NCBI RefSeq assembly: GCF_000143415.4
Contig: NW_003314261.1
Span: 1,502,117-1,566,116 of the forward strand
Length of the DNA: 64,000 nucleotides
Source of the DNA: Selaginella moellendorffii
Lineage: Eukaryota; Plantae; Lycopodiophyta
Reading direction: 5' to 3'
The notes under the pieces: generated by a model
Database searches by the model: none
Told to the model about the DNA's origin: nothing
Seen by the model: only the letters and a program-made list of their open reading frames with translations
Shown: piece after piece, positions 18,018 to 47,046 of the stretch
How positions within the stretch are numbered: position 1 is the stretch's first letter
Layout: each line of letters opens with the position of its first letter
Program-made: the position numbers and the translations under genes

Positions 18018-18258
18018 CTTTGGCATCTAGTTCCATCCTGTGACTTTTACATTTTTGTCTAAGATCCTTTTGGATTGCTCAAAGCTACCTAGAATTCTTT
18101 CGTTCTGACCACTCAGCGTAGGAGTGATCAGAGGAAAGCTTGACGAAAGCCTCGGAAAATTGCGAGCCATTCCACGTATATTTTAATGCCTTATCAGAAT
18201 AACAAGAGTTAGAGCAGATTGCTAGCGAAAAACGCTTCTTACCAAAGGTGATCACTGG

Positions 18259-20468: not shown

Positions 20469-20560
20469 AAACCCTAAAAATGCCCCAAGGGTTTTAGGGT
20501 TTAAAGGGCATATTCTACGAATATCGTCGAGTGGGGGGGTTTAGGGTTTTAGGGTTCTCG
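20469..20560. promoter_or_regulatory. 92-bp bidirectional promoter (MPP10 / RCC1 gene) with telo-boxes
   Basis: AAACCCTA at 20469-20476 and TAGGGTTT at ~20495 and ~20542, between divergent ATGs. Confidence 0.7.
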
Positions 20561-22324
20561 ATGGCGTGGAGCGCGATGCTGCGGCGAGCAGCGCCATCAC
20601 ACCTCGCATTTCGATCGCTCCAGCGGCGGCGGATAGGATATCTGGCGGATCGAGTGAGCAGCGGCGAGCCGGCGGAGCTGGAGGTATGGGCGTGGGGGCG
20701 GGGGACTCACGGGCAAGTCGGACATGGATCCGAGGACACGGAGAAGCTGCCGGTGCTAATCTCCACGCTCAAGCTCGCGGCATTCACAGGGATGGCTCCA
20801 ATCCAGGGGAGAATGCCGGTGGACATGGAAGTGGCCGCGCAGGCCGAGGAGGTGAGGCTGGATGTGCTTGAGAGGTGTGGTGTTTTTAAGAGGGCCGCCG
20901 CCGGTGGTGGTGGCGGTGGTGGTGGCGTGGATCCATCGCTCTTTGTGGAGAAGGCCAAGCCCCGGCTGGGAAACGTTGGAGTGACTTGCGGGCTCTTCCA
21001 TTCGGTGCTCTTCGCCGAGCAGGATGTTTTTGTGTGGGGGAAGGGCGATGGTGGAAGGCTGGGCATAGACACGGAGTTTAACCAGTACAAGCCTTACGTG
21101 AATCCCAGGATCAAGAGGGTCCAAATGGCGAGCGCTGGAGGATTGCACAACATCGCTCTCACAGAAGTTGGAAATGTGTATACATGGTACGTGAGATCAT
21201 CCTTGGTTTTTGATTTCTTCTTTTCTTGTTCTTGCGCTTGAGATGTGTTGATGCCAAAGCTTGCAGGGGGTACGGGGCTTTTGGTGCTCTAGGCCATGGA
21301 TCATACGAGCGAGAGCTTCTTCCCAGATTGTTGGAGGGCCCGTGGAAAGACAGGATAGTTCACGTTTCGGCCGGGGGATCGCACACCGCCGCAGTCACGG
21401 AAAGTGGTAAGCAAAGTTCTCTTTTTTCTTGAGCAAGTCTGATTGTTTTCTTCTTCTTTCTTCTGTAAAGGCGAGCTTTACACATGGGGAAGAGACGAGG
21501 GTGAAGGAAGGCTCGGGCATGGAAACCCGGACATCATGGACGAAGGTGCATTGAGCAGGCCGACGAAGGTCCAAGCGCTAGACGTTCCCATCGCCTTGGT
21601 TTATTGCGGGGGATTTTTCACAATGGCTCTCACTAAGTCGGGACAATTATGGTCCTGGGGAGGTATATTTTTCTTTTCCTGAAAACTGGGGAGACTAGTG
21701 TTGATTCTGTTCAGGGAATGCAAACCATGAGCTTGGCCATGGAACGAGAGCGAATAACTGGAAGCCCAAGGTTGTAGCCGCTCTGGAAGATGTGACTCTA
21801 GTGCAAGTAGCTTGTGGTGGATTCCATGCTGCTGCTCTCACTCGTAAGTTCTTGCCTTGGATTTTTCTTGTTGGTACGTAACATTCTACTTGTTTCGCTT
21901 AAGAGGACGGGAAAGTGATTACATGGGGATATGGTGGAAATGGCCAACTTGGTCATGGGACTTTGGAAAACGGGAAAGAGCCGGCTATTGTCGAGGCTAT
22001 GGCTGATAAAACATGCACTTACATTGCTTGCGGACCGGCTTGGACAGCAGCAATCACTGGTTAGTAGCGTTTTCTTTTTTTCTTGCCAGAAATGCTCATA
22101 TGCTTTCAGAGAATGGGGATCTATATACGTGGGGAAAGAATCGCGACTACCAGCTCGGAATTCCTGGACTTAAGGATGAGCAACTAGATCCCGTTTTGGT
22201 ACAATTTCCACAGGCTCTTCATGAGAAAACTCCGGTAGAAGTGTTGGGTGTTTCTTGTGGAGCTAATCACGGGGTTTGTATTGTTTCGAGACCCAAACCA
22301 GCTCAGGTAACACAGAGCTTGTAA
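20561..22324 (+). CDS. RUG3: RCC1/UVR8-like beta-propeller protein, probably mitochondrial (RUG3-like)
   Basis: Arg-rich N-terminal presequence; repeated VWGKGDGGRLG, WGYGAFGALGHG, WGRDEGEGRLG, WGYGGNGQLGHG, WGKNRDYQLG RCC1 repeats. Orthology to RUG3 is inferred from motif recall. Confidence 0.8.
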
Positions 22325-22440
22325 CATTGGAATTCGTAAACAAAGACGCGATGGTAAGGTGATAATCCTGGATGTCAGCTCCACTATGAAGAAGGCTTAC
22401 ACTGTGATGATTCTTCCATTTGGTTTGATTTTGAGTGAGT

Positions 22441-23663
22441 ATGGAGCCCAAGAGCAGGATTCTGATCGTTGGAGCTACGGGATACATCGGCAAGTACATC
22501 GCTACTGCTAGTATTCAATCGGGTCATCCAACTAGTATACTAGTTCGTCCACAGGTACTTTCAAGCTATCTATATTTCTTCTTTGATCTCTGGGGTGAGC
22601 TTCAGGTGTCAAAACATGTTGATAAAGTCCGGTTCCTGGTTGGGCTAAGAAAAGCCGGAGCAACGATTTACACCGTACTAGCTATCATCAGTTACTTGGT
22701 GTTGGTTCACTTACATTTCTGCTTTTTGGAAACCAGTGCTTTCTGGAAGACCGAGAGGATCTTGTGCGAATATTACAGCAAGTCGATGTTGTGATCTGCG
22801 CTCTTGGGGAAGATCAACTAAAGCTCCAGTACGATCTCATCAGAGCCGTGAAAGAAGCTGGAAACATCAAGGTGAAGTTTACGGTTTTCAAGTGAATCCC
22901 GACTTACACAGTTGTCTTCTCCAGAAGTTCTACCCCTCCGAGTTTGGGATGGACGCGGATAGGATCTGCAAGGACCAGTCCATTCCCGAGAGCCCCATGT
23001 ATAGGGACAAGGTAGCTATCCGGAGAGCCATCGAAGCAGCAGGAATTCCTCATACGTTTTTCATGGCGAACTGTATCATGGGGCTCATGCTCGCCAGTTT
23101 CGTACAAATGGACGGTTTCCCGACTTTCACTCCACCCAGAGACAAGGTTTGCATTTACAAAGATGGAGATCACAAAGGTACCAGTTTTGTTGTTTCTAGA
23201 TCATGCATTTGTCTCTTTTTACTTTGGCGGATTCACAGTCATGTATATCTCCGAGGAGGACCTCGCAACTTACTTGCTCAAGTCGGTCGATGATCCCAGA
23301 ACACTCAACAAGGCTCTTTACGTTCGCCCTCCCGGAAACGCCTTGACAATGAACGAGCAAGTAGCATTGTGGGAAGAAATGACCGGCAGCACCCTTGAAA
23401 AGAGGTGGATGAGTGAGGAGGAGGTTCTTCTACACATCAACGGTGAGAGCTTTCATTTGCGAGGTCTACTGACGGGATTGTTTGGTTTTGCAGACGCTCA
23501 AACTCCATTGCAGCTCAGAGAGGTGTGGACGCGCATCTATCACGTTTTTTACAATGGAGCTATGTGCTTCGAGTTGGCTCCTGATGATATTGAAGTCACT
23601 GCTTTGTATCCTGAGGTAGAGTATACTTCTCCACAAGTATATCTCAAGCCTTATGCGTGCTGA
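22441..23663 (+). CDS. Isoflavone reductase-like / PIP-family (PCBER/PLR/IFR) NmrA reductase, copy 1
   Basis: SRILIVGATGYIG, VDVVI, AVKEAGNIK/KFYPSEFG.D, RRAIEAAGIPHT, VDDPRTLNK, LYPEVEYT; 5 short introns. Confidence 0.92.
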
Positions 23664-24294
23664 TTCCCTGATCAACATCCTTGATCAACACGGAGCTTCA
23701 ACAATGAATACTAACTTGCTCCACGTATCAAGCAGAAACTTGCACGGCAATCTTGAAAATGTTCTGGAGGCAAACTCCATAAGTTCAATAATGTTAGTTT
23801 TCTTCTCTCAGGAATCCAAAGTGTTTGGTTACGAAGATCTTATTCACATTTTCACACTTGTTCCTGCACAACCAGCTAGAGGTCTCTTTTGTCACTAAAG
23901 TAGTGAGTGAAGGAGGTGTCATTGAGCAACTTTTCCTTGAGAGTTTTAGGCAGCAAGATGTGTACGTCGACACTGCTGCTTTGATCGATTGATCTGAGCT
24001 GGAAAAAGTGCTACAAACGATGGCAGACAAGAGAATGCAAGACTGAGCTAATGCACCACCCCGCCACCCAAAATCATTGCCTGGAAACCTCCACAGAGCT
24101 GTGCTATAATGCATTGATGCCAGCATTGCCCCAGGAAAGTCCAGCTACGTAGAGCTTGTGGTCTAAAATTTAAAGGGCTAAGCATTACTTACCACCAAGG
24201 AAGCAATGCTCAAGAAAATTAACATTTAGAAAGTTTTAATCTTCATTTTACAAACAAAATTTGGCTAATGGTTTTTTTTTTTGCTTTTTTTTTT

Positions 24295-24879
24295 TCAGTA
24301 AATCACAAATTGTTGAGGGCGTGAATAGCTTTGCTGCTGACCATATTGTGACTCAACTACAGTGTTAATAAACTGTGATTGTCCTGGAAGTAAATGTGCA
24401 CCAATCTTAGCTAACTCATCTGCAACTTGATTTCCAGCGATGTCGTAGTGCCCCTTCACCTTACAAAAATGAACTGGAACAAGTGATGTTCCTGCAAGCC
24501 AAACTATCGTCTGGATGATATCTGCATTTGGATGGCGACCCAGGGCTATTGGATCTTGCACATACATCTCCAGCAGCGTCAAGGAGTCATAACTGTCGGT
24601 GTATACAAAGATTGGCTCCCACAATCCCCAGCGCCATTCCATCTCTAAACAGATTTCGAGGGCTCGCATCAAACCCAACAGCTCAAACGTGATAGTGGAG
24701 CTTGTATGTAAGTTGTCGTTTGCCCTTCTTCCACAAGCGAGTCGCATGGAAACTCTCGGGATAAACACTCCATAACCTCCGAAAACCCCACGCTTGAAAG
24801 ATCCATCGGTAAAAGCCTGCAATCCATGATCGCTGGCTACCATTTCCCGCGTACGCACGACCTTGTCCACCTCAAACAT
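24295..24879 (-). CDS. Stand-alone RNase HI-like protein, copy 1 (intronless, 194 aa)
   Basis: AFTDGS, TFELLGL..AL, VYTDS, KVKGH, GNQVADELAK: full D-E-D-H-D catalytic set. TATATAAA ~75 bp upstream; A-rich tract directly after the stop. Confidence 0.88.
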   Translation of the reverse strand: MFEVDKVVRTREMVASDHGLQAFTDGSFKRGVFGGYGVFIPRVSMRLACGRRANDNLHTSSTITFELLGLMRALEICLEMEWRWGLWEPIFVYTDSYDSLTLLEMYVQDPIALGRHPNADIIQTIVWLAGTSLVPVHFCKVKGHYDIAGNQVADELAKIGAHLLPGQSQFINTVVESQYGQQQSYSRPQQFVIY

Positions 24880-24950
24880 ATTTCACTTGCTCACCTTTAA
24901 TGCTCTCTTCCTGTTCTGGAAAGTATACCTAACCCAAAAAGGCAATGGCA

Positions 24951-24962
24951 TTTTATATAAGC
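24951..24962 (-). promoter_or_regulatory. Putative TATA box of the RNase H gene (conserved in all six full copies)
   Basis: Minus strand reads gcTTATATAAAatg, ~75 bp 5' of the ATG. Confidence 0.55.
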
Positions 24963-25356
24963 TATGGAAATAATGCTTTAATTTGGAAATTCGAAGCGTC
25001 GAAGATGATGCACGATCCGATAGACCAACAGCCCTAGAAACCTGCCAATGCGACTTAGAAACTTCATCCTTTCGTCTGGATCGAGCCTGCAATCAGGAAA
25101 GCTGATCACGCTATCGCTCGCTGTTTAGAACTTGAAGAAAAGCCAGAAGGAAAAAGCAGCGTTAGCAGGAGAGATCAGCATGGCAGCCGGGGGCGGCGAT
25201 CTTATACGGCACTCGCTCCTCCCGTCGTTTTCCAACCGCCTCATCCGACGCATGCACGCGCTTACCGATTTATATTCCACGGCTTACATCAAGCAACGCT
25301 GTGCTTTCCTGGAGAAAAACAAGGCCTTCACAAAACCAGAAAAAGATCTTGTCTCC

Positions 25357-27290
25357 CAAAGTTATGCCTGGCGTGTGCCATCCAGCCGAAATGCTTCACG
25401 TCAGCTCACCATCTAGGACGCGGCAGCTAGAAGGTGTCTACTTCTCGACCTCCATGAGTGTTGATTTAGTTCCTGCCAGAAGGTGTTAAAACGATACAAG
25501 CTCGAGAGAAGGGCCCAACCAGGATTGATTTTTCATGCGTCTCGATTCGCCGTGCTACTTCCAGGCACACAGGAGAACCTTGAAGTGGTTTTTGACCCCT
25601 GAGAAGCACAAACAATGTGTCTCTTCAAAGAAAAAGGAATGTGTTTTACAGCGTGTTTCCGCCGAGTTGATCTTCAATTATCGTGTTCATTTCCGGGAAT
25701 TGCGTCAATAGATCAGTCTGCGGTTTGTGAAAAGTGATTCAGCACCACACCTCTTAGCACGCTCATTACCTACCTCGTCATACGGATTTTCAGTGAAGGC
25801 ACAGTGAAGCCATAATCAAGTGCAAGCTCTGCGTTTGAAAGATCACCATAGTTTATCCAAATCTGCGAAGCCGAATGAAACATGAAAACAAAACAAAGAC
25901 CACTGCCTCTACCTGATCGTTTTCAGCATAGTCTCTGTCCGCTGTAACCTGCTTGTGGTACGGAAAAGAAAAAGAAAGAACTTCAGGCGTATCTTACAAC
26001 TGCGTAGTTGAGAAGCCCGTTAAATGAGAGCTTCGCAAAGCTGGTTGCGTTGTGGTTGAAAAAATCGAGCATTGGTATCTGCTAACGCCGCGTTATAATA
26101 ATGTACACAAGGACGTAAACAGAAATAAAGGGAGACATAGCATTACTAATGTTGTCGAGTCCTCTCCAATGGCTAGTGAACGAGAAAAAACTGCAGCAAA
26201 GGCAGGACGAACAAAACTAGCAAGAAACAAGCTTGCTTCCTGTACCTGTGGCGTATACATGCTTCAAGTCTTCAAGAGACACCTTACCGAATAGTTGAGG
26301 CCAAACATCAAGTGCCTGCTCCAGTACACAGGTACAAAAGTCCTTCAAGCATCAAAGTAAAAAATTTCCTCCTTGAATAAAACCATTCGGAAAAGAAAAA
26401 AAACAGTAAGAAAACTAAGTGAATGAAAGCTTGCAAAATAGAAAACTACCCGAAGTACTTACGTTTTGCACTTGGCCAAACTCAGTTGTTATCATTTCCA
26501 GCCGCTCACGAGCCTTGCCGTATAAAGGGCTCGCCCTCAAGTAACTTAGCTCGGTGTCCTCCCAACGAAACTACGCACTTGAAAACTTTGAGAAACAAAA
26601 ACTCGATAGTCCAGTACCGTGTTGTCGAGCTCCGCTGGTTGAGGAAGACACGAGATGTATGGTGCCCATACTGACGAGAAAGATTTAGCAAAGCGAAGAC
26701 GAAAATGTTGAGAGTAAACTTGCCTGGCCTTTGTAGCGTTCCATGAGGACAATAAGAGCAAGTTTGGTCCACGGCTTAACAGTGCTGGGCAAAACCGTGC
26801 TGAGCTGGTCAGGAAGATCGCTAGGAGCTATCATCTGGACGTAAACAAGAACCAACATTATCCCCTGCGCCATAGACTCATCAATGAATCAAAAGGAAAA
26901 AACTAAAAACCGATACTCGACCTGCCCGCCAGATTCTCGCGAAGTCCCAATGCGCACCGCCGATGGATCGCCATCATCGTTCCGGCTCGCGAGCCACGAC
27001 ATAAAACCTGCGTAGCCATTGCTCAGCTTCCGCTGCGCCTGGTTCTGGAATAATCACGCCCAGAACTCGCGAAAGCGATCGATCCACAGTCGATCTGTCA
27101 GCGTACCTGAAGCGCCCAACAGCTCCTCGAGATCGATCCAGCCGCGCCGGGAAGAAGAAGAATCCTGGGCGGCCTACATTTCTCCTCTCCAAAACCAAAA
27201 CATATGTATTGCCACGTCATGGGAAAGCGTCGCTGATGTGGCAGATTCTCGTGCTTGCCACGTATTGAGTGCCTGCCACGTGGCAATCGT
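25357..27290 (-). pseudogene. Inverted full-length copy of the SET gene including its G-box promoter, copy 1
   Basis: Reverse complement of ~15970-18023 with introns retained; ATG followed directly by TAG; the GLFASRP (motif I) exon is deleted. Confidence 0.9.
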
Positions 27291-27299
27291 ATGAGCTAC

Positions 27300-27545
27300 A
27301 AACCCCGTGATTAGCTCCACAACAAACACCCAACACTTCTACCGGAGTTTTGTCATGAAGAGCCTGTGGAAATTGTACCGGAACTGGATCTAGTTGCTCA
27401 TCCTTAAGTCCAGGAATTCCGAGCTGGTAGTCGCGATTCTTTCCCCACGTATATAGTTCCCCACACTCTGAAAGCATATGAGCATTTCTTAAGGCTACTA
27501 ACAAGTGATTGCTGCTGTCCAAGCTGGTCGACAAGCAATGTAAGG
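27300..27545 (-). pseudogene. Inverted fragment of the RCC1/RUG3 3' exons
   Basis: ELYTWGKNRDYQLGIPGLKDEQLDPV...CGANHGVC, reverse complement of ~22020-22278. Recurs at ~34657-34905, ~42015-42262 and ~45951-46192. Confidence 0.88.
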
Positions 27546-27787
27546 AAACTGGGGAAAAAAAACCGCGACGCAGCAAGCTTCCGAGATGAGTTGATGTTGA
27601 ACCATATGGTGTCGTTCTTGCCAAAGTCGGACCTCCTCACCACCTGTGAGTGGGCAAGAACGTACTTGTGTGGCTGCTGCTCTCGGCCGGAGAGTCAATC
27701 TCGATGTTACTGAGCCGCATCCACAACACAGAGCGCAGAGTCTTTGTGTCGAGCAGCATCAAAGTGTTGGGGACGTGACTGCACAGC

Positions 27788-28121
27788 ACCAGTTTCGTAC
27801 AAATGGACGGTTTCCCGACTTTCACTCCACCCAGAGACAAGGTTTGCATTTACAAAGATGGAGATCACAAAAGTACCACTTTTGTTCATGCATTTGTCTC
27901 TTTTTACTTTGGCAGATTCACAGTCATGTATCTCTCCAGGAGGAGCTAGCTTGCTCAAGTCGGTCGATGATCCCAGAACGCTCAACAAGGCTCTTTACGC
28001 TCGCTCGAATGACCGGGAGCACGCTTGAAAAGAGGTGGATGAGCGAGGATGGATTCTTCTACACATCAATGGTGAGAGTTTTCATTTGTGAGGTCTACTG
28101 ATGGGATTGCTTGGTTTTGCA
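27788..28121 (+). pseudogene. Internally deleted IFR-like gene fragment
   Basis: Matches 23094-23492 with deletions and frameshifts. Recurs at ~35147-35480, ~42505-42838 and ~46434-46768. Confidence 0.88.
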
Positions 28122-28288
28122 ATCCCGTCAGTAGACTGGGCTAAGTATTAATTACCAAGGAAGCAGTGTAAACAAGCTTAATGTTGTTACTTTAATGCTT
28201 AAGTAGACTAATATTTAGAAAGTTTTAATCTTCATTTTACAAACAAAATTTGGCTAATGGGTTTTTTTTTTTTTTTTTGCTATTTTTT

Positions 28289-28876
28289 TCAGTAAATTGC
28301 AAATTGTTGAAGGCATGAATAGCTTTGCTGTTGACCATATTGTGACTCAACTACAGTGTTAATAAACTGTGATTGTCCTGGAAGTAAATGTGCACCAATC
28401 TTAGCTAACTCATCCGCAACCTGATTTCCAACGATGTCATAGTGCCCCTTCACCTTACAAAAATGAACTGGAACAAATGATGTTCCTGCAAGCCAAACAA
28501 TCGTCTGGATGATATCTGCATTTGGGTGGTGACCCAGGGCTATTGGATCTTGCACATACATCTCCAGCAGCGTCAAGGAGTCATAACTGTCGGTGTATAC
28601 AAAGACTGGCTCCCACAATCCCCAGTGCCATTCCATCTCCAAACAAATTTCAAGGGCTCGCATCAAACCCAACAGCTCAAACGTGATAGTGGAGGAACTT
28701 GTATGTAAGTTGTCGTTTGCCCTTCTTCCACAAGCGAGTCGCATAGAAACTCTCGAGATAAACACTCCATAACCTCCGAAAACTCTGCGCTTGAAAGATC
28801 CATCAGTAAAAGCTTGTAATCCATGATCGCTAGCTACCATTTCCCACGTACGCATGACCTTGTCCACCTCAAACAT
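28289..28876 (-). CDS. RNase HI-like protein, copy 2 (195 aa)
   Basis: Open ORF, catalytic residues intact, in-frame 3-nt insertion (TSSS). Confidence 0.85.
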   Translation of the reverse strand: MFEVDKVMRTWEMVASDHGLQAFTDGSFKRRVFGGYGVFISRVSMRLACGRRANDNLHTSSSTITFELLGLMRALEICLEMEWHWGLWEPVFVYTDSYDSLTLLEMYVQDPIALGHHPNADIIQTIVWLAGTSFVPVHFCKVKGHYDIVGNQVADELAKIGAHLLPGQSQFINTVVESQYGQQQSYSCLQQFAIY

Positions 28877-29440
28877 ATTTCACTTGCTCGCCTTTAATGC
28901 TCTCTTCCTGTTCTGAAAAGTATACCTAACCCAAAAAGGCAATCGCATTTTATATAAGCTATGGAAATAATGTTTTAATTTGGAAATTCGAAGTGTCCCT
29001 GAGGACGAAGATGATGCACGATCCGATAGACCAACAGCTCTAGAAACCTGCCAATGCGACTTAGAAACTTCATCCTTTCGTCTGGATCGAGCCTGCAATC
29101 AGGAAAGCTGATCACACTATCGCTTGCTGTTTAGAACTTGAAGAAAAGCCAGAAGGAAAAAAGCAGCGTTAGCAGGAGAGATCAGCATGGCAGCCGGGGG
29201 CGGCGATCTTATATGGCAGTCGCTCCTCCTGTCGTTTTCCAACCGCCTCATCCGACGCATGCACGCGCTTACCGATTTATATTCCACGGCTTACACCAAG
29301 CAACGCTGTGCTTTCCTGGAGAAAAACAAGGCCTTCACAAAACCAGAAAAAGATCTTGTCTCCCAAAGTTATGCCTGGCGTGTGCCATCCAGCCGAAATG
29401 CTTCACGCTCTTTAAAACTCTCAGCTCACCATCTAGGACG

Positions 29441-29697
29441 CGTTTTCTTTTTTTCTTGCAAGAAATGCTCATATGCTTTCAGAGAATGGGGATCTATATA
29501 CGTGGGGAAAGAATCGCGACTACCAGCTCGGAATTCCTGGACTTAAGGATGAGCAACTAGATCCCGTTTTGGTACAATTTCCACAGGCTCTTCATGAGAA
29601 AACTCCGGTAGAAGTGTTGGGTGTTTCTTGTGGAGCTAATCACGGGGTTTGTATTGTTTCGAGACCCAAACCAGCTCAGGTAACACAGAGCTTGTAA
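29441..29697 (+). pseudogene. Duplicated last exon of the RCC1/RUG3 gene (start of A unit 2; again at 36786-37042)
   Basis: Near-identical to 22068-22324, lacking upstream exons. Confidence 0.9.
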
Positions 29698-29814
29698 CAT
29701 TGGAATTCGTAAACAAAGACGCGATGGTAAGGTGATAATCCTGGATGTCAGCTCCACTATGAAGAAGGCTTACACTGTGATGATTCTTCCATTTGGTTTT
29801 GATTTTGAGTGAGT

Positions 29815-31037
29815 ATGGAGCCCAAGAGCAGGATTCTGATCGTTGGAGCTACGGGATACATCGGCAAGTACATCGCTACTGCTAGTATTCAATCGGGTCA
29901 TCCAACTAGTATACTAGTTCGTCCACAGGTACTTTCAAGCTATCTATATTTCTTCTTTGATCTCTGGGGTGAGTTTCAGGTGTCAAAACATGTTGATAAA
30001 GTCCGGTTCCTGGTTGGGCTAAGAAAAGCCGGAGCAACGATTTACACCGTACTAGCTATCATCAGTTACTTGGTGTTGGTTCACTTACATTTCTGCTTTT
30101 TGGAAACCAGTGCTTTCTGGAAGACCGAGAGGATCTTGTGCGAATATTACAGCAAGTCGATGTTGTGATCTGCGCTCTTGGGGAAGATCAACTAAAGCTC
30201 CAGTACGATCTCATCAGAGCCGTGAAAGAAGCTGGAAACATCAAGGTGAAGTTTACGGTTTTCAAGTGAATCCCGACTTACACAGTTGTCTTCTCCAGAA
30301 GTTCTACCCCTCCGAGTTTGGGATGGACGCGGATAGGATCTGCAAGGACCAGTCCATTCCCGAGAGCCCCATGTATAGGGACAAGGTAGCTATCCGGAGA
30401 GCCATCGAAGCAGCAGGAATTCCTCATACGTTTTTCATGGCGAACTGTATCATGGGGCTCATGCTCGCCAGTTTCGTACAAATGGACGGTTTCCCGACTT
30501 TCACTCCACCCAGAGACAAGGTTTGCATTTACAAAGATGGAGATCACAAAGGTACCAGTTTTGTTGTTTCTAGATCATGCATTTGTCTCTTTTTACTTTG
30601 GCGGATTCACAGTCATGTATATCTCCGAGGAGGACCTCGCAACTTACTTGCTCAAGTCGGTCGATGATCCCAGAACACTCAACAAGGCTCTTTACGTTCG
30701 CCCTCCCGGAAACGCCTTGACAATGAACGAGCAAGTAGCATTGTGGGAAGAAATGACCGGCAGCACCCTTGAAAAGAGGTGGATGAGTGAGGAGGAGGTT
30801 CTTCTACACATCAACGGTGAGAGCTTTCATTTGCGAGGTCTACTGACGGGATTGTTTGGTTTTGCAGATGCTCAAACTCCATTGCAGCTCAGAGAGGTGT
30901 GGACGCGCATCTATCACGTTTTTTACAATGGAGCTATGTGCTTCGAGTTGGCTCCGGATGATATTGAAGCCACTGCTTTGTATCCTGAGGTAGAGTATAC
31001 TTCTCCACAAGTATATCTCAAGCCTTATGTGTGCTGA
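29815..31037 (+). CDS. Isoflavone reductase-like PIP reductase, copy 2
   Basis: Near-identical to copy 1; splice sites intact. Confidence 0.9.
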
Positions 31038-31668
31038 TTCCTTGATCAACATCCTTGATCAACACGGAGCTTCAACAATGAATACTAACTTGCTCCACGT
31101 ATCAAGCAGAAACGTGCACGGCAATCTTGAAAATGTTCTGGAGGCAAACTCCATAAGTTCAATAATGTTAGTTTTCTTCTCTCAGGAATCCAAAGTGTTT
31201 GGTTACGAAGATCTTATTCACATTTTCACACTTGTTCCTGCACAACCAGCTAGAGGTCTCTTTTGTCACTAAAGTAGTGAGTGAAGGAGGTGTCATTGAG
31301 CAACTTTTCCTTGAGAGTTTTAGGCAGCAAGATGTGTACGTCGACACTGCTGCTTTGATCGATTGATCTGAGCTGGAAAAAGTGCTACAAACGATGGCAG
31401 ACAAGAGAATGCAAGACTGAGCTAATGCACCACCCCGCCACCCAAAATCATTGCCTGGAAACCTCCACAGAGCTGTGCTATAATGCATTGATGCCAGCAT
31501 TGCCCCAGGAAAGTCCAGCTACGTAGAGCTTGTGGTCTAAAATTTAAAAAGCTAAGCATTACTTACCACCAAGGAAGCAATGCTCAAGAAAATTAGCATT
31601 TAGAAAGTTTTAATCTTCATTTTACAAACAAAATTTGGCTAATGGTTTTTTTTTTTGCTTTTTGTTTT

Positions 31669-32253
31669 TCAGTAAATCACAAATTGTTGAGGGCGTGAAT
31701 AGCTTTGCTGCTGACCATATTGTGACTCAACTACAGTGTTAATAAACTGTGATTGTCCTGGAAGTAAATGTGCACCAATCTTAGCTAACTCATCTGCAAC
31801 CTGATTTCCAGCGATGTCGTAATGCCCCTTCACCTTACAAAAATGAACTGGAACAAGTGATGTTCCTGCAAGCCAAACTATCGTCTGGATGATATCTGCA
31901 TTTGGGTGGCGACCCAGGGCTATTGGATCTTGCACATACATCTCCAGCAGTGTCAAGGAGTCATAACTGTCGGTGTATACAAAGACTGGCTCCCACAATC
32001 CCCAGCGCCATTCCATCTCTAAACAGATTTCGAGGGCTCGCATCAAACCCAACAGCTCAAACGTGATAGTGGAGCTTGTATGTAAGTTGTCGTTTGCCCT
32101 TCTTCCACAAGCGAGTCGCATGGAAACTCTCGGGATAAACACTCCATAACCTCCGAAAACCCCGCGTTTGAAGGATCCGTCAGTAAAAGCCTGCAATCCA
32201 TGATCGCTGGCTACCATTTCTTGAGTACGCACGACCTTGTCCACCTCAAACAT
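31669..32253 (-). CDS. RNase HI-like protein, copy 3
   Basis: Open 194-aa ORF, catalytic residues intact. Confidence 0.85.
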   Translation of the reverse strand: MFEVDKVVRTQEMVASDHGLQAFTDGSFKRGVFGGYGVFIPRVSMRLACGRRANDNLHTSSTITFELLGLMRALEICLEMEWRWGLWEPVFVYTDSYDSLTLLEMYVQDPIALGRHPNADIIQTIVWLAGTSLVPVHFCKVKGHYDIAGNQVADELAKIGAHLLPGQSQFINTVVESQYGQQQSYSRPQQFVIY

Positions 32254-32738
32254 ATTTCACTTGCTTGCCTTTAATGCTCTCTTCCTGTTCTGGAAAGTAT
32301 ACCTAACCCAAAAAGGCAATCGCATTTTATATAAGCTATGGAAATAATGCTTTAATTTGGAAATTCGAAGCGTCCCTGAGGACGAAGATGATGCACGTTC
32401 CGATAGACCAACAGCCCTAGAAACCTGCCAATACGACTTAGAAACTTCAACCTTTCGTCTGGATCGAGCCTGCAATCAGGAAAGCTGGTCACGCTATCGC
32501 TCGCTGTTTAGAACTTGAAGAAAAGCCAGAAGGAAAAAGCAGCGTTAGCAGGAGAGATCAGCATGGCAGCCGGGGGCGGCGATCTTATACGGCAGTTGCT
32601 CCTCCCGTCGTTTTCCAACCGCCTCATCCGACGCATGCACGCGCTTACCGATTTATATTCCACGGCTTACACCAAGCAACGCTGTGCTTTCCTGGAGAAA
32701 AACAAGGCCTTCACAAAACCAGAAAAAGATCTTGTCTC

Positions 32739-34648
32739 CCAAAGTTATGCCTGGCATGTGCCATTCAGCCGAAATGCTTCACGCTCTTTAAAACTCTCAG
32801 CTCACCATCTAGGACGCGGCAGCTAGAAGTTGTCTACTTCTCGACCTCCATGAGTGTTGATTTAGTTCCTGCCAGACGGTGTTAGGGCCCAACCAGGATT
32901 GATTTTTCATGCGTCTCGATTCGCCGTGCTACTTCCAGGCACACAGGAGAACCTTGAAGTGGTTTTTGACCCCTGAGAAGCACAAACAATGTGTCTCTTC
33001 AAAGAAAAAGGAATGTGTTTTACAGCGTGTTTCCGCCAAGTTGATCTTTAATTATCGTGTTCATTTCCGGGAATTGCGTCAATAGCTCAGTCTGCGGTTT
33101 GTGAAAAGTGATTCAGCACCACACCTCTTAGCACGCTCATTACCTCGTCATACGGATTTTCAGGCACAGTGAAGCCATAATCAAGTGCAAGCTCTGCGTT
33201 TGAAAGATCACCATAGTTTATCCAAATCTGCGAAGCCGAATGAAACATGAAAACAAAACAAAGACCACTGCCTCTACCTGATCGTTTTCAGCATAGTCTC
33301 TGTCCGCTGTAACCTGCTTGTGGTACGGAAAGGAAAAAGAAAGAACTTCAGGCGTATCTTACAACTGCGTAGTTGAGAAGCCCGTTAAATGAGAGCTTCG
33401 CAAAGCTGGTTGCGTTGTGGTTGAAAAAATCGAGCATTGGTATCTGCTAACGCCGCGTTATAATGTACACAAGGACGTAAACAGAATTAAAGGGAGACAT
33501 ACCATTACTAATGTCGAGTCCTCTCCAATGGCTAGTGAACGAGAAAAAACTGCAGCAAAGGAAGGACGAACAAAACTAGCAAGAAACAAGCTTGCTTCCT
33601 GTACCTGTGGCGTATACATGCTTCAAGTCTTCAAGAGACACTTTACCGAATAGTTGAGGCCAAACATCAAGTGCCTGCTCCAGTACACAGGTACAAAAAT
33701 CCTTCAAGCATCAAAGTAAAAAATTTCCCCCTTGAATAAAACCATTCGGAAAAGAAAAAAACAGTAAAAAAACTAAGTGAATGAAAGCTTGCAAAATAGA
33801 AAACTACCCGAAGTACTTACGTTTTGCACTTGGCCAAACTCAGTTGTTATCATTTCCAGCCGCTCACGAGCCTTGCCGTATAAAGGGCTCGCCCTCAAGT
33901 AACTTAGCTCGGTGTCCTCCCAACGAAACTACGCACTTGAAAACTTTGAGAAACAAAAACTCGATAGTCCAGTACCCGTGTTGTCGAGCTCCGCTGGTTG
34001 AGGAAGACACGAGATGTATGGTGCCCATACTGACGAGAAAGATTTAGCAAAGCGAAGACGAAAATGTTGAGAGTAAACTTGCCTGGCCTTTGTAGCGTTC
34101 CATGAGGACAATAAGAGCAAGTTTGGTCCACGGCTTAACAGTGCTGGGCAAAACCGTGCTGAGCTGGTCAGGAAGATCACTAGGAGCTATCATCTGGACG
34201 TAAACAAGAACCAACATTATCCCCTGCGCCATAGACTCATCAATGAATCAAAAGGAAAAAACTAAAAACCGATACTCGACCTGCCCGCCAGATTCTCGCG
34301 AAGTCCCAATGCGCACCGCCGATGGATCGCCATCATCGTTCCGGCTCGCGAGCCACGACATAAAACCTGCGTAGCAATTGCTCAGCTTCCGCTGCGCCTG
34401 GTTCTGGAATAATCAAGCCCAGAACTCGCGAAAACGATCGATCGACAGTCGATCTGTCAGCGTACCTGAAGCGCCCAACAGCTCCTCGAGATCGATCCAG
34501 CCGCGCCGGGAAGAAGAAGAATCCTGGGCGGCCCACATTTCTCCTCTCCAAAACCAAAACATATGTATTGCCACGTCATGGGAAAGCGTCGCTGATGTGG
34601 CAGATTCTCGTGCTGCCACGTATTGAGTGCCTGCCACGTGGCAGTTGT
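32739..34648 (-). pseudogene. Inverted SET pseudogene, copy 2
   Basis: As copy 1; frameshifting deletion after ATG TGG; motif I exon deleted. Confidence 0.9.
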
Positions 34649-35637
34649 ATGCGCTACAAACCCCGTGATTAGCTCCACAAGAAACACCCAACACTTCTAC
34701 CGGAGTTTTGTCATGAAGAGCCTGTGGAAATTGTACCGGAACTGGATCTAGTTGCTCATCCTTAAGTCCAGGAATTCCGAGCTGGTAGTCGCGATTCTTT
34801 CCCCACGTATATAGTTCCCCACACTCTGAAAGCATATGAGCATTTCTTAAGGGTACTAACAAGTGATTGCTGCTGTCCAAGCTGGTCCACAAGCAATGTA
34901 AGGAAACTGGGGAAAAAAAACCGGGACACAGCACGCTTCCGAGATGAGTTGACGTTGAACCATATGGTGTCGTTCTTGCCAAAGTCGGACCTCCTCACCA
35001 CCTGTGAGTGGGCAAGAACGTACTTGTGTGGCTGCTGCTCTTGGCCGGAGAGTCGATCTCGATGTTACTGAGCCGCATCCACAACACAGAGCGCAGAGTC
35101 TTTGTGTTGAGCAGCATCAAAGTGTTGGGGACGTGACTGCACAGCACCAGTTTCGTACAAATGGACGGTTTCCTGACTTTCACTCCACCCAGAGACAAGG
35201 TTTGCATTTACAAAGATGGAGATCACAAAAGTACCACTTTTGTTCATGCATTTGTCTCTTTTTACTTTGGCAGATTCACAGTCATGTATCTCTCCAGGAG
35301 GAGCTAGCTTGCTCAAGTGGGTCGATGATCCCAGAACGCTCAACAAGGCTCTTTACGCTCGCTCGAAATGACCGGGAGCACACTTGAAAAGAGGTGGATG
35401 AGCGAGGATGGATTTTTCCACACATCAATGGTGAGAGTTTTCATTTGTGAGGTCTACTGATGGGATTGCTTGGTTTTGCAATCCCGTCAGTAGACTGGGC
35501 TAAGCATTAATTACCACCAAGGAACAAGCTTAATGTTGTTACTTTAATGCTTAAGTAGATTAATATTTAGAAAGTTTTAATCTTCATTTTACAAACAAAA
35601 TTTGGCTAATGGGTTTTTTTTTTTTTTGCTATTTTTT

Positions 35638-36222
35638 TCAGTAAATCGCAAATTGTTGAGGGCGTGAATAGCTTTGCTGTTGACCATATTGTGACTCAAC
35701 TACAGTGTTAATAAACTGTGATTGTCCTGGAAGTAAATGTGCACCAATCTTAGCTAACTCATCTGCAACCTGATTTCCAGCAATGTCGTAGTGCCCCTTC
35801 ACCTTACAAAAATGAACTGGAACAAATGATGTTCCTGCAAGCCAAACTATCGTCTGGATGATATTTGCATTTGGGTGGCGACCCAGGGCTATTGGATCTT
35901 GCACATACATCTCCAGCAGCATCAAGGAGTCATAACTGTCAGTGTATACAAAGACTGGCTCCCACAATCCCCAGTGCCATTCCATCTCCAAACAGATTTC
36001 AAGTGCTCGCATCAAACCTAACAGCTCAAACGTGATAGTGGAGCTTGTATGTAAGTTGTCGTTTGCCCTTCTTCCACAAGCGAGTCGCATGGAAACTCTC
36101 GGGATAAACACTCCATAACCTCCGAAAACTCCGCGCTTGAAAGATCCGTCAGTAAAAGCTTGCAATCCATGATCGCTAGCTACCATTTCCCGCGTACGCA
36201 CGACTTTGTCCACCTCAAACAT
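35638..36222 (-). CDS. RNase HI-like protein, copy 4
   Basis: Open 194-aa ORF, catalytic residues intact. Confidence 0.85.
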   Translation of the reverse strand: MFEVDKVVRTREMVASDHGLQAFTDGSFKRGVFGGYGVFIPRVSMRLACGRRANDNLHTSSTITFELLGLMRALEICLEMEWHWGLWEPVFVYTDSYDSLMLLEMYVQDPIALGRHPNANIIQTIVWLAGTSFVPVHFCKVKGHYDIAGNQVADELAKIGAHLLPGQSQFINTVVESQYGQQQSYSRPQQFAIY

Positions 36223-37159
36223 ATTTCACTTGCTCGCCTTTAATGCTCTCTTCCTGTTCTGGAAAGTATACCTGACCCAAAAAGGCAATGGCATTTTATA
36301 TAAGCTATGGAAATAATGCTTTAATTTGGAAATTCGAAGCGTCCCTGAGGACGAAGATGATGCACGATCCGATAGACCAACAGCTCTAGAAACCTACCAA
36401 TATGACTTAGAAACTTCATCCTTTCGTCTGGATCGAGCCTGCAATCAGGAAAGCTGATCACGCTATCGCTCGCTGTTTAGAACTTGAAGAAAAGCCAGAA
36501 GGAAAAAGCAGCGTTAGCAGGAGAGATCAGCATGGGAGCCGGGGGTGGCAATCTTATACGGCAGTCGCTCCTCCCGTCGTTTTCCAACCACCTCATCCGA
36601 CGCATGCACGCGCTTACCGATTTATATTCCACGCCTTACATCAAGCAACGCTGTGCTTTCCTGGAGAAAAACAAGGCCTTCACAAAACCAGAAAAAGATC
36701 TTGTCTCCCAAAGTTATGCCTGGCGTGTGCCATCCAGCCGAAATGCTTCACGCTCTTTAAAACTCTCAGCTCACCATCTAGGACGCGTTTTCTTTTTTTC
36801 TTGCAAGAAATGCTCATATGCTTTCAGAGAATGGGGATCTATATACGTGGGGAAAGAATCGCGACTACCAGCTCGGAATTCCTGGACTTAAGGATGAGCA
36901 ACTAGATCCCGTTTTGGTACAATTTCCACAGGCTCTTCATGAGAAAACTCCAGTAGAAGTGTTGGGTGTTTCTTGTGGAGCTAATCACGGGGTTTGTATT
37001 GTTTCGAGACCCAAACCAGCTCAGGTAACACAGAGCTTGTAACATTGGAATTCGTAAACAAAGACGCGATGGTAAGGTGATAATCCTGGATGTCAGCTCC
37101 ACTATGAAGAAGGCTTACACTGTGATGATTCTTCCATTTGGTTTTGATTTTGAGTGAGT

Positions 37160-38382: not shown

Positions 38383-39025
38383 TTCCTTGATCAACATCCT
38401 TGATCAACACGGAGATTCAACAATGAATACTAACTTGCTCCACGTATCAAGCAGAAACGTGCACGGCAATCTTGAAAATTTTCTGGAGGCAAACTCCATA
38501 AGTTCAATAATGTTAGTTTTCTTCTCTCAGGAATCCAAAGTGTTTGGTTACGAAGATCTTATTCACATTTTCACACTTGTTCCTGCACAACCAGCTAGAG
38601 GTCTCTTTTGTCACTAAAGTAGTGAGTGAAGGAGGTGTCATTGAGCAACTTTTCCTTGAGAGTTTTAGGCAGCAAGATGTGTACGTCGACACTGCTGCTT
38701 TGATCGATTGATCTGAGCTGGAAAAAGTGCTACAAACGATGGCAGACAACAGAATGCAAGGCTGAGCTAATACACCACCCCGCCACCCAAAATCATTGCC
38801 TGGAAACCTCGACAGAGCTGTGCTATAATGCATTGATGCCAGCATTGCCCTAGGAAAGTCCAGCTACATTCAAAGGTGGTTAGAGTTTGTGGTTTAAAAT
38901 TTAAAGGGCTAAGCATTAATTACCACCAAGGAAGCAATGCTCAAGAAAATTTACATTTAGAAAGTTTTAATCTTCATTTTACAAACTAAATTTGGCTAAT
39001 GGTTTTTTTTTTTTGCTTTTTTTTT

Positions 39026-39610
39026 TCAGTAAATCGCAAATTGTTGAGGGCATGAATAGCTTTGCTGTTGACCATATTGTGACTCAACTACAGTGTTAAT
39101 AAACTGTGATTGTCCTGGAAGTAAATGTGCACCAATCTTAGCTAACTCATCTGCAACCTGATTTTCAGCGATGTCGTAATGCCCCTTCACCTTACAAAAA
39201 TGAACTGGAACAAGTGATGTTCCTGCAAGCCAAACTATCGTCTGGATGATATCTGCATTTGGGTGGCGACCCAGGGCTATTGGATCTTGCACATACATCT
39301 CCAGCAGCGTCAAGGAGTCATAACTGTCGGTGTATACAAAGATTGGCTCCCACAATCCCCAGCGCCATTCCATCTCCAAGCAGATTTCGAGGGCTCGCAT
39401 CAAACCTAACAACTCAAACGTGATAATGGAGCTTGTATGTAAGTTGTCGTTTGCCCTTCTTCCACAAGCGAGTCGCATGGAAACTCTCGGGATAAACACT
39501 CCATAACCTCCGAAAACTCCGCGTTTGAAGGATCCGTCAGTAAAAGCCTGCAATCCATGATCGCTGGCTACCATTTCTCGCGTACGCACGACTTTGTCCA
39601 CCTCAAACAT
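39026..39610 (-). CDS. RNase HI-like protein, copy 5
   Basis: Open 194-aa ORF; G>E change in the GNQ motif; acidic catalytic residues intact. Confidence 0.83.
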   Translation of the reverse strand: MFEVDKVVRTREMVASDHGLQAFTDGSFKRGVFGGYGVFIPRVSMRLACGRRANDNLHTSSIITFELLGLMRALEICLEMEWRWGLWEPIFVYTDSYDSLTLLEMYVQDPIALGRHPNADIIQTIVWLAGTSLVPVHFCKVKGHYDIAENQVADELAKIGAHLLPGQSQFINTVVESQYGQQQSYSCPQQFAIY

Positions 39611-42996: not shown

Positions 42997-43581
42997 TCAG
43001 TAAATCGCAAATTGTTGAGGGCGTGAATAGCTTTGCTGTTGACCATATTGTGACTCAACTACAGTGTTAATAAACTGTGATTGTCCTGGAAGTAAATGTG
43101 CACCAATCTTAGCTAACTCATCTGCAACCTGATTTCCAGCAATGTTGTAGTGCCCCTTCACCTTACAAAAATGAACTGGAACAAGTGATGTTCCTGCAAG
43201 CCAAACTATCGTCTGGATGATATCTGCATTTGGGTGGCAACCCAGGGCTATTGGATCTTGCACATACATCTCCAGCAGCGTCAAAGAGTTATAACTGTCC
43301 GTGTATACAAAGACTGGCTCCCACAATCCCCAGCGCCATTCCATCTCCAAACAGATTTCGAGTGCTCGCATCAAACCCAACAGCTCAAACATGATAGTGG
43401 AGCTTGTATGTAAGTTGTCATTTGCCCTTCTTCCACAAGCGAGTCGCATAGAAACTCTCGGGATAAACACTCTATAACCTCCGAAAACTCCGCGCTTGAA
43501 AGATCCATCAGTAAAAGCTTGCAATCCATGATCGCTAGCTACCATTTCCCGCATACGCACGACCTTGTCCACCTCAAACAT
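42997..43581 (-). CDS. RNase HI-like protein, copy 6
   Basis: Open 194-aa ORF with more missense changes (G>R, D>N, R>C); D-E-D-H-D retained. Confidence 0.8.
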   Translation of the reverse strand: MFEVDKVVRMREMVASDHGLQAFTDGSFKRGVFGGYRVFIPRVSMRLACGRRANDNLHTSSTIMFELLGLMRALEICLEMEWRWGLWEPVFVYTDSYNSLTLLEMYVQDPIALGCHPNADIIQTIVWLAGTSLVPVHFCKVKGHYNIAGNQVADELAKIGAHLLPGQSQFINTVVESQYGQQQSYSRPQQFAIY

Positions 43582-46932: not shown

Positions 46933-47046
46933 TCAGTAAATCACAAATTGTTGAGGGCATGAATAGCTTTGCTGTTGACCATATTGTGACTCAACTACAT
47001 TGTTAATAAACTGTGATTGTCCTGGAAGTAAATGTGCACCAATCTT
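46933..47046 (-). pseudogene. RNase H copy 7, 3' end only, truncated by retroelement sequence
   Basis: KIGAHLLPGQSQF...QFVIY*; similarity ends abruptly at 47046. Confidence 0.9.

What the first reader, a model, noticed from the sequence alone, without database searches (positions are those of the whole stretch)
24295..32253. RNase H copies show synonymous excess and are more diverged than the co-duplicated IFR genes
By-eye comparison of copy 1 vs copy 3 (both in A units) gives ~10 synonymous changes versus 2 altered codons. Five silent changes fall within T-D-G-S-F-K-R alone (acc/act, gat/gac, tct/tcc, aag/aaa, cgt/cgc). The flanking IFR copies differ at only ~5 sites in 1.2 kb. The only indel among the ORFs is in-frame, while neighbouring SET/IFR fragments are frameshifted. 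Inference: purifying selection, plus gene conversion from an older pool of RNase H paralogs.
Basis: partly seen in the sequence, partly recalled or inferred. Interest (0 to 1): 0.75.

Follow-up and report, generated by a model that had tools for sequence, protein, structure and literature searches.

The report
Selected RNase H copies, patchy array
Six intact, unannotated copies of a spikemoss-specific RNase H gene sit in a tandem array and do show purifying selection. Their extra divergence comes from patchy homogenisation of the array plus C-to-T decay, so no outside pool of donor genes is needed.

Summary
Copy 1 vs copy 3 differ at 13 nt: 10 silent codons and 2 altered codons. The five named silent changes in T-D-G-S-F-K-R are exact. 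The IFR copies differ at 5/1229 or 0/1229 sites; the RNase H ORFs differ at 13-28/582. The only ORF indel is one in-frame codon.

Purifying selection is supported. Codon-model omega is 0.33 (p=5e-6) and a context-aware omega is 0.30. No stops are seen against about 8 expected, and no frameshifts against about 4.5 expected. The signal is uneven: shared variants are nearly all silent. All 23 amino-acid changes are C>T or G>A, 13 of them at CpG. The B-type copies (c2, c4, c6) cannot be told from neutral decay.

The second inference, conversion from an older pool of RNase H paralogs, is not supported as stated. High divergence covers the whole 1.2-kb sub-repeat and its array-specific flanks. The IFR core and spacer Y are near-identical, introns included. 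Copies are mosaics of each other, and c6 is a visible hybrid. R and Y2 carry a CpG-biased transition excess (ORF ts:tv 52:3), which points to methylation-linked decay.

The only annotated paralogs are at most 46% identical, too distant to donate. Unannotated donors could not be searched. This is an ordinary process acting on a new member of a known family.

The parts
24295..24879 (-). RNase H ORF c1 (A-type, 194 aa), closest to the consensus
   Evidence: PF00075 at 36.9 bits against a 25.8 cut-off. Only 4 private changes over 1.2 kb, and all 4 private ORF changes are silent.
28289..28876 (-). RNase H ORF c2 (B-type, 195 aa, one extra Ser codon), the most decayed copy
   Evidence: PF00075. In-frame 3-nt indel. 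18 private changes, 15 of them GC>AT. Private N:S is 7:6.
31669..32253 (-). RNase H ORF c3 (A-type)
35638..36222 (-). RNase H ORF c4 (B-type)
39026..39610 (-). RNase H ORF c5 (A position, mosaic of A-type and c4/B-type alleles; 10-bp deletion just upstream of the ATG)
42997..43581 (-). RNase H ORF c6: a hybrid with a B-type 3' end and a c1-like upstream part, followed by spacer Y instead of X
   Evidence: Upstream part is 98.1% identical to c1. It shares indels with c1. B-type alleles occur at ORF positions 45 and 63 and in the 3' flank. Private N:S is 6:3.
46933..47046 (-). Truncated copy c7 (last 37 codons only), marking the right end of the array
   Evidence: A degenerate Ty3/gypsy RT-like sequence abuts at 47047 and beyond.
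24205..25400 (-). 1.2-kb sub-repeat R: AT-rich 3' flank with an A-run, the ORF, and about 525 bp upstream. The other five are 28194-29407, 31579-32818, 35546-36752, 38936-40131 and 42904-44100.
   Evidence: Self-blast, six-copy alignment and boundaries.
22067..29439 (+). Super-unit 1 of the tandem array. SU2 is 29440-36784, SU3 is 36785-44102, and a partial fourth unit is 44103-47046. Layout is X (RCC1 fragment + IFR), R_A, Y, Y2, R_B.
   Evidence: Self-blast shows a 7.37-kb period at 97.1-97.5% identity. Sliding mismatch profile.
22435..23663 (+). IFR/NmrA-like gene with introns. Copies lie at 29809-31037 and 37154-38382.
   Evidence: PF05368 on ORF pieces. 5/1229 and 0/1229 differences. The spliced protein was not assembled.
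25401..27202 (.). Spacer Y, of unknown nature, with CpG o/e about 1 and almost no CpG decay. An older inverted copy lies at 16085-18023.
   Evidence: No Pfam or Rfam match.
27203..28193 (.). Y2: old degenerate fragments of RCC1 (minus strand) and IFR (plus strand). It decays at CpG as R does.
   Evidence: PF00415 on 27217-27624. The IFR fragment is about 88% identical to the gene. CpG transitions 13/76.

Best explanation
The region is a 3.5-unit tandem array of 7.37-kb super-units in Selaginella moellendorffii. Each super-unit holds one intact IFR-like gene and two copies (A and B) of a 1.2-kb cassette, R. R encodes a 194-aa stand-alone type-1 RNase H of a spikemoss-specific family.

Shown:
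- The ORFs evolved under purifying selection, with omega about 0.3, no stops, no frameshifts and the catalytic D-E-D-H-D residues intact in all six.
- The constraint is still detectable on the branches leading to the A-type copies.
- It is not detectable for the B-type copies or at CpG sites.
- The array is a mosaic of blocks of different age. The IFR core and spacer Y are nearly identical between super-units, introns included. R, the 640 bp 3' of IFR, and Y2 are 1-2% diverged even after CpG sites are removed.
- R and Y2 also carry a strong CpG-centred GC>AT transition excess that IFR and Y lack.
- R copies are mosaics of one another, and c6 is a crossover hybrid.

Inferred:
- The IFR and Y blocks were homogenised or duplicated recently.
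- R persists as a larger pool of 6-7 exchanging copies, so it coalesces more slowly and keeps the old A/B divergence of about 8% at silent sites.
- R and Y2 are cytosine-methylated and therefore mutate faster.

The 'older pool' is thus the array's own A and B copies, not dispersed paralogs.
For: Identity:
- PF00075 scores above its gathering cut-off.
- D25, E66, D95, H144 and D154 are invariant, including in the 46%-identical paralog.
- The AlphaFold model has pLDDT 89, and the best Foldseek hits are E. coli RNase HI and the human RNase H1 catalytic domain.

Selection:
- GY94 omega is 0.33, with an LRT p of 5e-6.
- Terminal-branch omega is 0.46 (p=0.005 against 1), and internal-branch omega is about 0.
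- A-terminal omega is 0.29 (p=0.005); B-terminal omega is 0.61 (not significant).
- The context-aware test gives omega 0.30, P=5e-5. Expected stops are 8.4 against 0 seen (P=2e-4). Expected frameshifts are 4.5 against 0 seen (P=0.011).

Mosaic ages:
- SU2 vs SU3 transversions are 0/1500 in the IFR core and 0/1392 in Y. They are 10/1195 in R_A, 5/639 in the IFR 3' flank, 6/1357 in Y2 and 5/1198 in R_B. Fisher p is 4e-6.
- The partial edge unit is the most diverged, at 95-96% identity.

Exchange:
- 43% of informative site pairs are incompatible, with Rm of at least 12 and a PHI-like p of 0.001-0.008.
- Without CpG sites, 35% are still incompatible and Rm is at least 8.
- c6 is a hybrid.

Decay:
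- ORF ts:tv is 52:3, against 24:17 in X+Y.
- CpG transitions are 39/210 in R, against 2/310 in IFR+Y.
- Private changes are 50 GC>AT, 9 AT>GC and 13 transversions.
- All 23 amino-acid changes are C>T or G>A.
Against: - No methylation, expression or small-RNA data could be consulted, so methylation is inferred from the mutation spectrum alone.
- A GENECONV-like test found no tract that survives correction for 15 pairs; the best was p=0.015.
- Without CpG sites the PHI-like test is weak, at p=0.07-0.3.
- c3 and c5 each carry 4 private transversions in 1.2 kb that no other copy in the window explains. This leaves room for donors outside the window, such as the other haplotype or unannotated copies.
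- The tree-based omega tests assume one tree although the copies recombine.
- The upstream 525 bp has unexpectedly few old polymorphisms, which this account explains only by assuming a conversion hot spot there.
Confidence: 0.6

Rival explanations
1. The RNase H copies are kept diverged because tracts are repeatedly copied into them from older, dispersed RNase H paralogs elsewhere in the genome. Those donors are themselves under selection, so mostly silent differences are imported.
For: Each copy has private variants, including transversions, that no other copy in the window carries. Silent changes are clustered in codons 10-31. The six ORFs are unannotated, so further unannotated copies could exist.
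Against: High divergence extends into flanks that are specific to this array, which dispersed RNase H paralogs would not share. The only relatives in 1.84 billion representative proteins are 34-46% identical. 69% of private changes are GC>AT, mostly at CpG, as expected of in-place decay. Five of the 13 c1-c3 differences (ORF positions 75, 81, 87, 271, 435) involve an allele shared with another copy in the array.
Confidence: 0.12
2. All six ORFs are now silenced pseudogenes decaying neutrally. The silent-site excess is a relic of selection on the ancestral A and B genes before the array expanded.
For: Internal-branch omega is about 0 against 0.46 on terminal branches. Shared variants are 5N:16S against 18N:18S for private ones. 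CpG-transition singletons hit codon positions 1, 2 and 3 and the upstream DNA at equal rates (28, 36, 38 and 25%). B-terminal omega is 0.61, not significantly below 1. The ORFs are absent from protein collections.
Against: Terminal omega is still below 1 (p=0.005), and A-terminal omega is 0.29. Scaling from private silent changes alone gives about 4 expected stops against none seen; this is my arithmetic, Poisson P about 0.016. There are no frameshifts against 4.5 expected. The catalytic residues are intact in all six.
Confidence: 0.15
3. Assembly artefact. Reads from many near-identical cassettes and from the two haplotypes were mixed. That would produce mosaic R copies and artificially identical IFR and Y blocks.
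For: The copies are mosaic with short, interleaved patterns. There are blocks of exactly zero difference.
Against: The window has no Ns. A-type and B-type 3' flanks are cleanly partitioned by position. The strong codon-position and GC>AT structure of the variants is biological whichever copy they sit in.
Confidence: 0.08
4. The cassette is part of a retroelement or a retrocopy. The silent-site excess would then reflect selection on an active element lineage and not on these copies.
For: The ORF is intronless, and an A-run of about 25-30 nt starts at the stop codon. The mutation signature resembles that of methylated repeats. The array abuts a nest of LTR retrotransposons.
Against: There is no RT anywhere near the ORF. 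The upstream DNA is non-coding, with stops and a frameshift. The top relatives lack RVT domains. The paralog P0001 has the same 195-aa stand-alone architecture. R_B carries about 66 bp of Y sequence at its upstream end, so it arose by segmental copying of R_A+Y and not by insertion. The copies occupy identical positions in each super-unit.
Confidence: 0.07

Closest known systems
Type-1 RNase H (E. coli RNase HI, human RNase H1 catalytic domain; Pfam PF00075)
   Same: The Pfam match is above its cut-off. The DEDD residues plus His are conserved. The predicted fold superposes on 1rbt, 2qk9 and related entries, with target-normalised TM 0.70-0.75.
   Different: Only 20-24% identical to solved structures. 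No N-terminal hybrid-binding domain (PF01693 not hit). The C-terminal tail of about 20-25 aa is predicted disordered. Relatives closer than about 30% identity exist only in S. moellendorffii.
SELMODRAFT_409945 / 414436 (P0001/P0153), annotated hypothetical RNase H type-1 domain proteins of S. moellendorffii
   Same: Same 195-aa stand-alone architecture. Long identical blocks (VYTDSYDSLTLLEMY, VHFCKVKGH). 46% identity.
   Different: Far too diverged to exchange DNA with the array. Single locus, two alleles.
Concerted evolution and birth-and-death of tandem gene arrays by unequal crossing-over and gene conversion
   Same: Head-to-tail units, blocks of near-identity beside older blocks, a hybrid copy, and an edge unit that is the most diverged.
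   Different: Homogenisation here is strikingly patchy. A functional gene core and one spacer are near-identical, while the twice-per-unit cassette keeps 4-8% silent-site divergence.
Methylation-driven CpG decay of plant repeats (and, by analogy only, fungal RIP)
   Same: Strong GC>AT transition bias confined to particular repeated segments.
   Different: The context is CpG (plus some CHG), not the CpA of Neurospora RIP. Not all duplicated DNA is hit: IFR and Y escape. Methylation itself was not measured.

Membership tests
Type-1 RNase H (PF00075) | Profile match above the curated cut-off | tested here: met
   36.9 and 37.6 bits against a 25.8 cut-off, covering profile positions 5-140 of 141.
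Type-1 RNase H (PF00075) | Catalytic Asp-Glu-Asp-Asp carboxylates plus the conserved His | tested here: met
   D25, E66, D95, H144 and D154 are invariant in all six copies and in P0001. The motifs align to bacterial RNase HI. H144, N150 and D154 are invariant, and D25, E66 and D95 at least 90% conserved, across 56 relatives.
Type-1 RNase H (PF00075) | RNase H fold | tested here: met
   Model pLDDT 89, pTM 0.85. Foldseek probability is 1.00 to E. coli RNase HI and human RNase H1, with E about 2e-7. This is a prediction, not a solved structure.
Type-1 RNase H (PF00075) | Cleavage of RNA in RNA/DNA hybrids | not testable with these tools
   Needs a biochemical assay.
Canonical eukaryotic RNase H1 | N-terminal hybrid-binding domain (PF01693) | tested here: not met
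   No PF01693 hit at E up to 0.01. The ORF starts about 20 residues before the first catalytic Asp.
Retroelement-encoded RNase H | RNase H domain fused to, or directly downstream of, a reverse transcriptase | tested here: not met
   The upstream same-frame stretch has stops in c4 and c6 and a 10-bp deletion in c5, and no Pfam hit. The top relatives carry no RVT_1.
Tandem array under concerted evolution | Head-to-tail repeats with recombinant copies and block-wise identity | tested here: met
Annotated paralogs are at most 46% identical. A look-up by sequence in the scan's own notes came back blank.
   Divergent blocks include 23566-24204 and Y2, which are array-specific.
Methylation-linked cytosine decay | GC>AT excess concentrated at CpG and region-specific | tested here: met
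Methylation-linked cytosine decay | Cytosine methylation of the segment | not testable with these tools
   S. moellendorffii MethylC-seq data sets exist (PMC5410703) but could not be mapped here.

The most novel reading that the evidence does not exclude
A spikemoss-specific stand-alone RNase H gene, with no relative closer than about 30% identity outside S. moellendorffii, has been amplified to six intact tandem copies and kept by selection, perhaps for dosage. It would serve a lineage-specific role in RNA/DNA-hybrid metabolism, for example R-loop, retroelement or virus control. Part of the array would at the same time be eroded by repeat-directed methylation, giving a visible tug-of-war between selection and silencing.
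Probability: 0.2. Interest if true: 0.55.

Novelty: new member of a known kind. Interest (0 to 1): 0.33.

Why it matters
The result shows that six unannotated ORFs in the S. moellendorffii reference are probably real genes, or very recently real genes, of a lineage-restricted RNase H family. It also gives a clean worked example of how block-wise homogenisation and context-dependent mutation can make co-duplicated genes look very different in age. Neither point changes current understanding. Both are useful for annotation, and as a caution when dating duplicates from a single gene.

Tried and rejected
- Upstream coding extension of the ORF, or read-through: rejected, because of stops in c4 and c6 and a 10-bp deletion in c5.
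- A divergent plus-strand gene in the upstream region: rejected, because its changes are mostly non-synonymous and the 3-nt periodicity is weak.
- SET domain fragments: none found; they are RCC1 fragments.
- ncRNA or tRNA in the array: none.
- Other diverged RNase H copies in the window: none.
- GENECONV-like longest-tract test: nothing survives correction.
- Strand asymmetry of C>T against G>A among the amino-acid changes: roughly symmetric (12 C>T, 11 G>A), so no sign of single-strand editing.
- Literature search for a Selaginella RNase H array: nothing relevant.
- The scan's own notes: nothing on this family.
The loci of the paralogs and any other genomic copies could therefore not be read.
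- The IFR spliced protein was not assembled. Only ORF pieces by reference were scanned, and the joined model was left out.
Full report
**What is there**

The window is plant-like nuclear DNA. The closest relatives of the ORFs are all S. moellendorffii proteins.

Self-comparison shows a tandem array with a 7.37-kb period: 22067-29439, 29440-36784 and 36785-44102, at 97.1-97.5% identity. A partial fourth unit runs to 47046. Each super-unit reads X - R_A - Y - Y2 - R_B.

- X is a 3' fragment of the neighbouring RCC1-like gene plus an intact NmrA/IFR-like gene with introns. The IFR copies lie at 22435-23663, 29809-31037 and 37154-38382.
- Y is 1.8 kb of unknown nature. An older inverted copy lies at 16085-18023 (89-93% identity).
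- Y2 holds old, degenerate RCC1 and IFR fragments. The IFR piece is about 88% identical to the gene.
- R is a 1.2-kb cassette present twice per unit.

R carries a 194-aa ORF on the minus strand. Six copies are intact. A seventh (46933-47046) keeps only the last 37 codons, and a degenerate Ty3/gypsy RT-like sequence abuts it. After c6 the array continues with Y, not X.

Only ORF pieces were scanned, by reference.

**What the ORF encodes**

- It matches Pfam RNase_H (PF00075) above the gathering score.
- The catalytic residues D25, E66, D95, H144 and D154 are invariant in all six copies and in the nearest paralog.
- An AlphaFold model (pLDDT 89) superposes best on E. coli RNase HI and the human RNase H1 catalytic domain.
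- There is no hybrid-binding domain and no reverse transcriptase nearby. The upstream DNA is non-coding, with stops in c4 and c6 and a 10-bp deletion in c5.

A profile search of 1.84 billion representative proteins found only three hits below E=1e-10, all from S. moellendorffii:
- P0001/P0153: 195 aa, 46% identity.
- P0007: 911 aa, 34% identity.
- P0008/P0154: 411 aa, 37% identity.

Everything else is generic RNase HI at under about 30% identity, and the top hits have no RVT domains. The six window ORFs are themselves absent from the protein collections, so they are unannotated.

**Check of the observation**

- c1 vs c3: 13 nt differences, made up of 10 silent codons plus R11Q and I89V.
- The five silent changes in codons 24-30 are exactly as listed.
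- IFR differs at 5/1229 sites (SU1 vs SU2 or SU3) and 0/1229 (SU2 vs SU3). ORFs at matching positions differ at 13-28/582 (Fisher p 6e-4 to 4e-8).
- The single ORF indel is one in-frame codon. The cassette's flanks have 6-7 indels.
- The 'SET' label is wrong; the fragments are RCC1.

**Purifying selection**

Pairwise NG86 omega is 0.05-0.35 and pairwise ML omega is 0.08-0.61.

My GY94/F3x4 fit on the six copies gives omega 0.33 and kappa 27. The LRT against omega=1 gives p=5e-6.

Because kappa is extreme and CpG sites are hypermutable, I repeated the test with context classes, scaling neutral expectations from the silent changes in each class.

| Class | Omega |
|---|---|
| CpG transitions | 0.63 (not significant) |
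| CHG transitions | 0.41 |
| CHH transitions | 0.22 |
| Transversions | 0 (0 N : 4 S) |
| All classes | 0.30 (P=5e-5) |

The same scaling gives 8.4 expected premature stops against none seen (P=2e-4). It gives 4.5 expected frameshifts against none seen (P=0.011).

The signal is uneven.
- Shared variants are 5N:16S; private ones are 18N:18S.
- Internal-branch omega is about 0. Terminal omega is 0.46, still below 1 (p=0.005).
- A-type terminal branches give 0.29 (p=0.005). B-type branches give 0.61, not distinguishable from 1.
- CpG-transition singletons are equally frequent at codon positions 1, 2 and 3 and in upstream DNA (28, 36, 38 and 25%).
- All 23 amino-acid changes are C>T or G>A, 13 of them at CpG.

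Constraint is therefore real, and probably continuing for the A copies. The B copies, especially c2 and c6, may already be drifting.

**Why R is more diverged than IFR**

The excess is not a property of the ORF.

In super-unit comparisons the IFR core (22067-23565, introns included) shows 0-1 mismatch per 300 bp. The whole of R_A and R_B shows 3-16 per 300 bp, the pseudogene fragments in 27430-28028 show 4-10, and the stretch 3' of IFR (23566-24153) shows 0-7.

Counting transversions only, SU2 vs SU3 (p=4e-6):

| Block | Transversions |
|---|---|
| IFR core | 0/1500 |
| Y | 0/1392 |
| R_A | 10/1195 |
| IFR 3' flank | 5/639 |
| Y2 | 6/1357 |
| R_B | 5/1198 |

So the array is a mosaic of young and old blocks, and the old blocks include sequence found only in this array. 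The partial edge unit is the most diverged, as expected for concerted evolution.

Within R:
- Silent third positions (7.35% mean pairwise) and the 3' flank (7.8%) carry the old A/B divergence.
- Positions 1 and 2 (2.5% and 2.1%) and, unexpectedly, the upstream 525 bp (2.7%) do not.

**Exchange among copies**

- 43% of informative site pairs fail the four-gamete test. Rm is at least 12, and nearby sites are more compatible than distant ones (p=0.001-0.008).
- Without CpG sites, 35% still fail and Rm is at least 8.
- c5 carries c4/B-type alleles at several sites.
- c6 is a physical hybrid. Its 3' end and flank are B-type. Its upstream part is 98.1% identical to c1 and shares indels with it. It is followed by Y.
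- A GENECONV-like longest-tract test found nothing that survives correction, so the tracts are short or overwritten.
- R_B includes about 66 bp of Y at its upstream end. The A/B pair therefore arose by segmental copying, not by insertion.

**A second component: C-to-T decay**

- ORF ts:tv is 52:3 and upstream is 31:7. In X and Y it is 14:8 and 10:9 (p=2e-5).
- Among super-units, CpG transitions segregate at 11/108 (R_A), 28/102 (R_B) and 13/76 (Y2). They segregate at only 1/124 in IFR and 1/186 in Y (p=1.5e-14).
- Private changes over the six cassettes are 50 GC>AT, 9 AT>GC and 13 transversions. c2 and c6 are the worst hit, and c1 is nearly untouched.

This is the signature of methylated cytosines. 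It is inferred only, because no methylome could be consulted. To my knowledge methylation in this species is concentrated on repeats. The paper I opened confirms that MethylC-seq data exist but does not settle this point.

**Verdict on the interpretation**

'Purifying selection' stands, with the caveats above.

'Conversion from an older pool of RNase H paralogs' does not stand as worded. The pool that can be seen is the array's own A and B copies. The divergent blocks reach beyond the cassette. Annotated paralogs are far too distant.

A residue of private transversions in c3 and c5 leaves about a 10-15% chance of donors outside the window, such as the other haplotype or unannotated copies.

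**Novelty and interest**

These are known processes acting on a new, unannotated cluster of a lineage-restricted RNase H family. It is a useful annotation and a tidy case study, but not surprising to a specialist.

Noticed in passing
window 24262-24297 (and the same place in every copy): An A-run of about 25-30 nt begins at the TGA stop of each RNase H ORF. Together with the intronless ORF this looks like a retrocopy tail. Homology between A and B copies continues about 100 bp beyond it.
   Followed up: partly
window 24880-25400 (upstream part of each cassette): This non-coding 525 bp carries as few old shared polymorphisms as non-synonymous sites (1.7% against 8% at silent sites; p=1.6e-5). 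Its private-change density is normal. It may be a conversion hot spot or a constrained element; this is unexplained.
   Followed up: partly
window 25401-27202 and 16085-18023: Spacer Y has CpG o/e of about 1 and almost no CpG decay, unlike its neighbours. An older inverted copy (89-93% identity) lies outside the array. There is no Pfam, Rfam or tRNA match, and its nature is unknown.
   Followed up: partly
window 47047-47700 (-) and 48516-50701 (+): Degenerate Ty3/gypsy RT-like sequence abuts the truncated seventh RNase H copy, in the same reading frame. Further right lie gag (CCHC knuckle), protease-like and RT-like ORFs of another LTR retrotransposon. These were identified by eye from motifs, without a Pfam scan.
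   Followed up: no
window 51844-52987 vs 57968-59111; 54246-59104 vs 59153-64000: A 1.14-kb direct repeat at 99.65% identity (LTR-like), and a 4.9-kb tandem duplication at 88.5%. Both carry 14-bp GACACGTGGCATGT micro-arrays.
   Followed up: no
window 10738-12245 vs 12929-14459: A 1.5-kb direct repeat at 93% identity, not examined.
   Followed up: no
window 19854-20468 (-) and 20531-22324 (+): An Mpp10-like exon and an RCC1-repeat gene lie head to head just left of the array. The array's left breakpoint (22067) lies inside the 3' part of the RCC1 gene.
   Followed up: no
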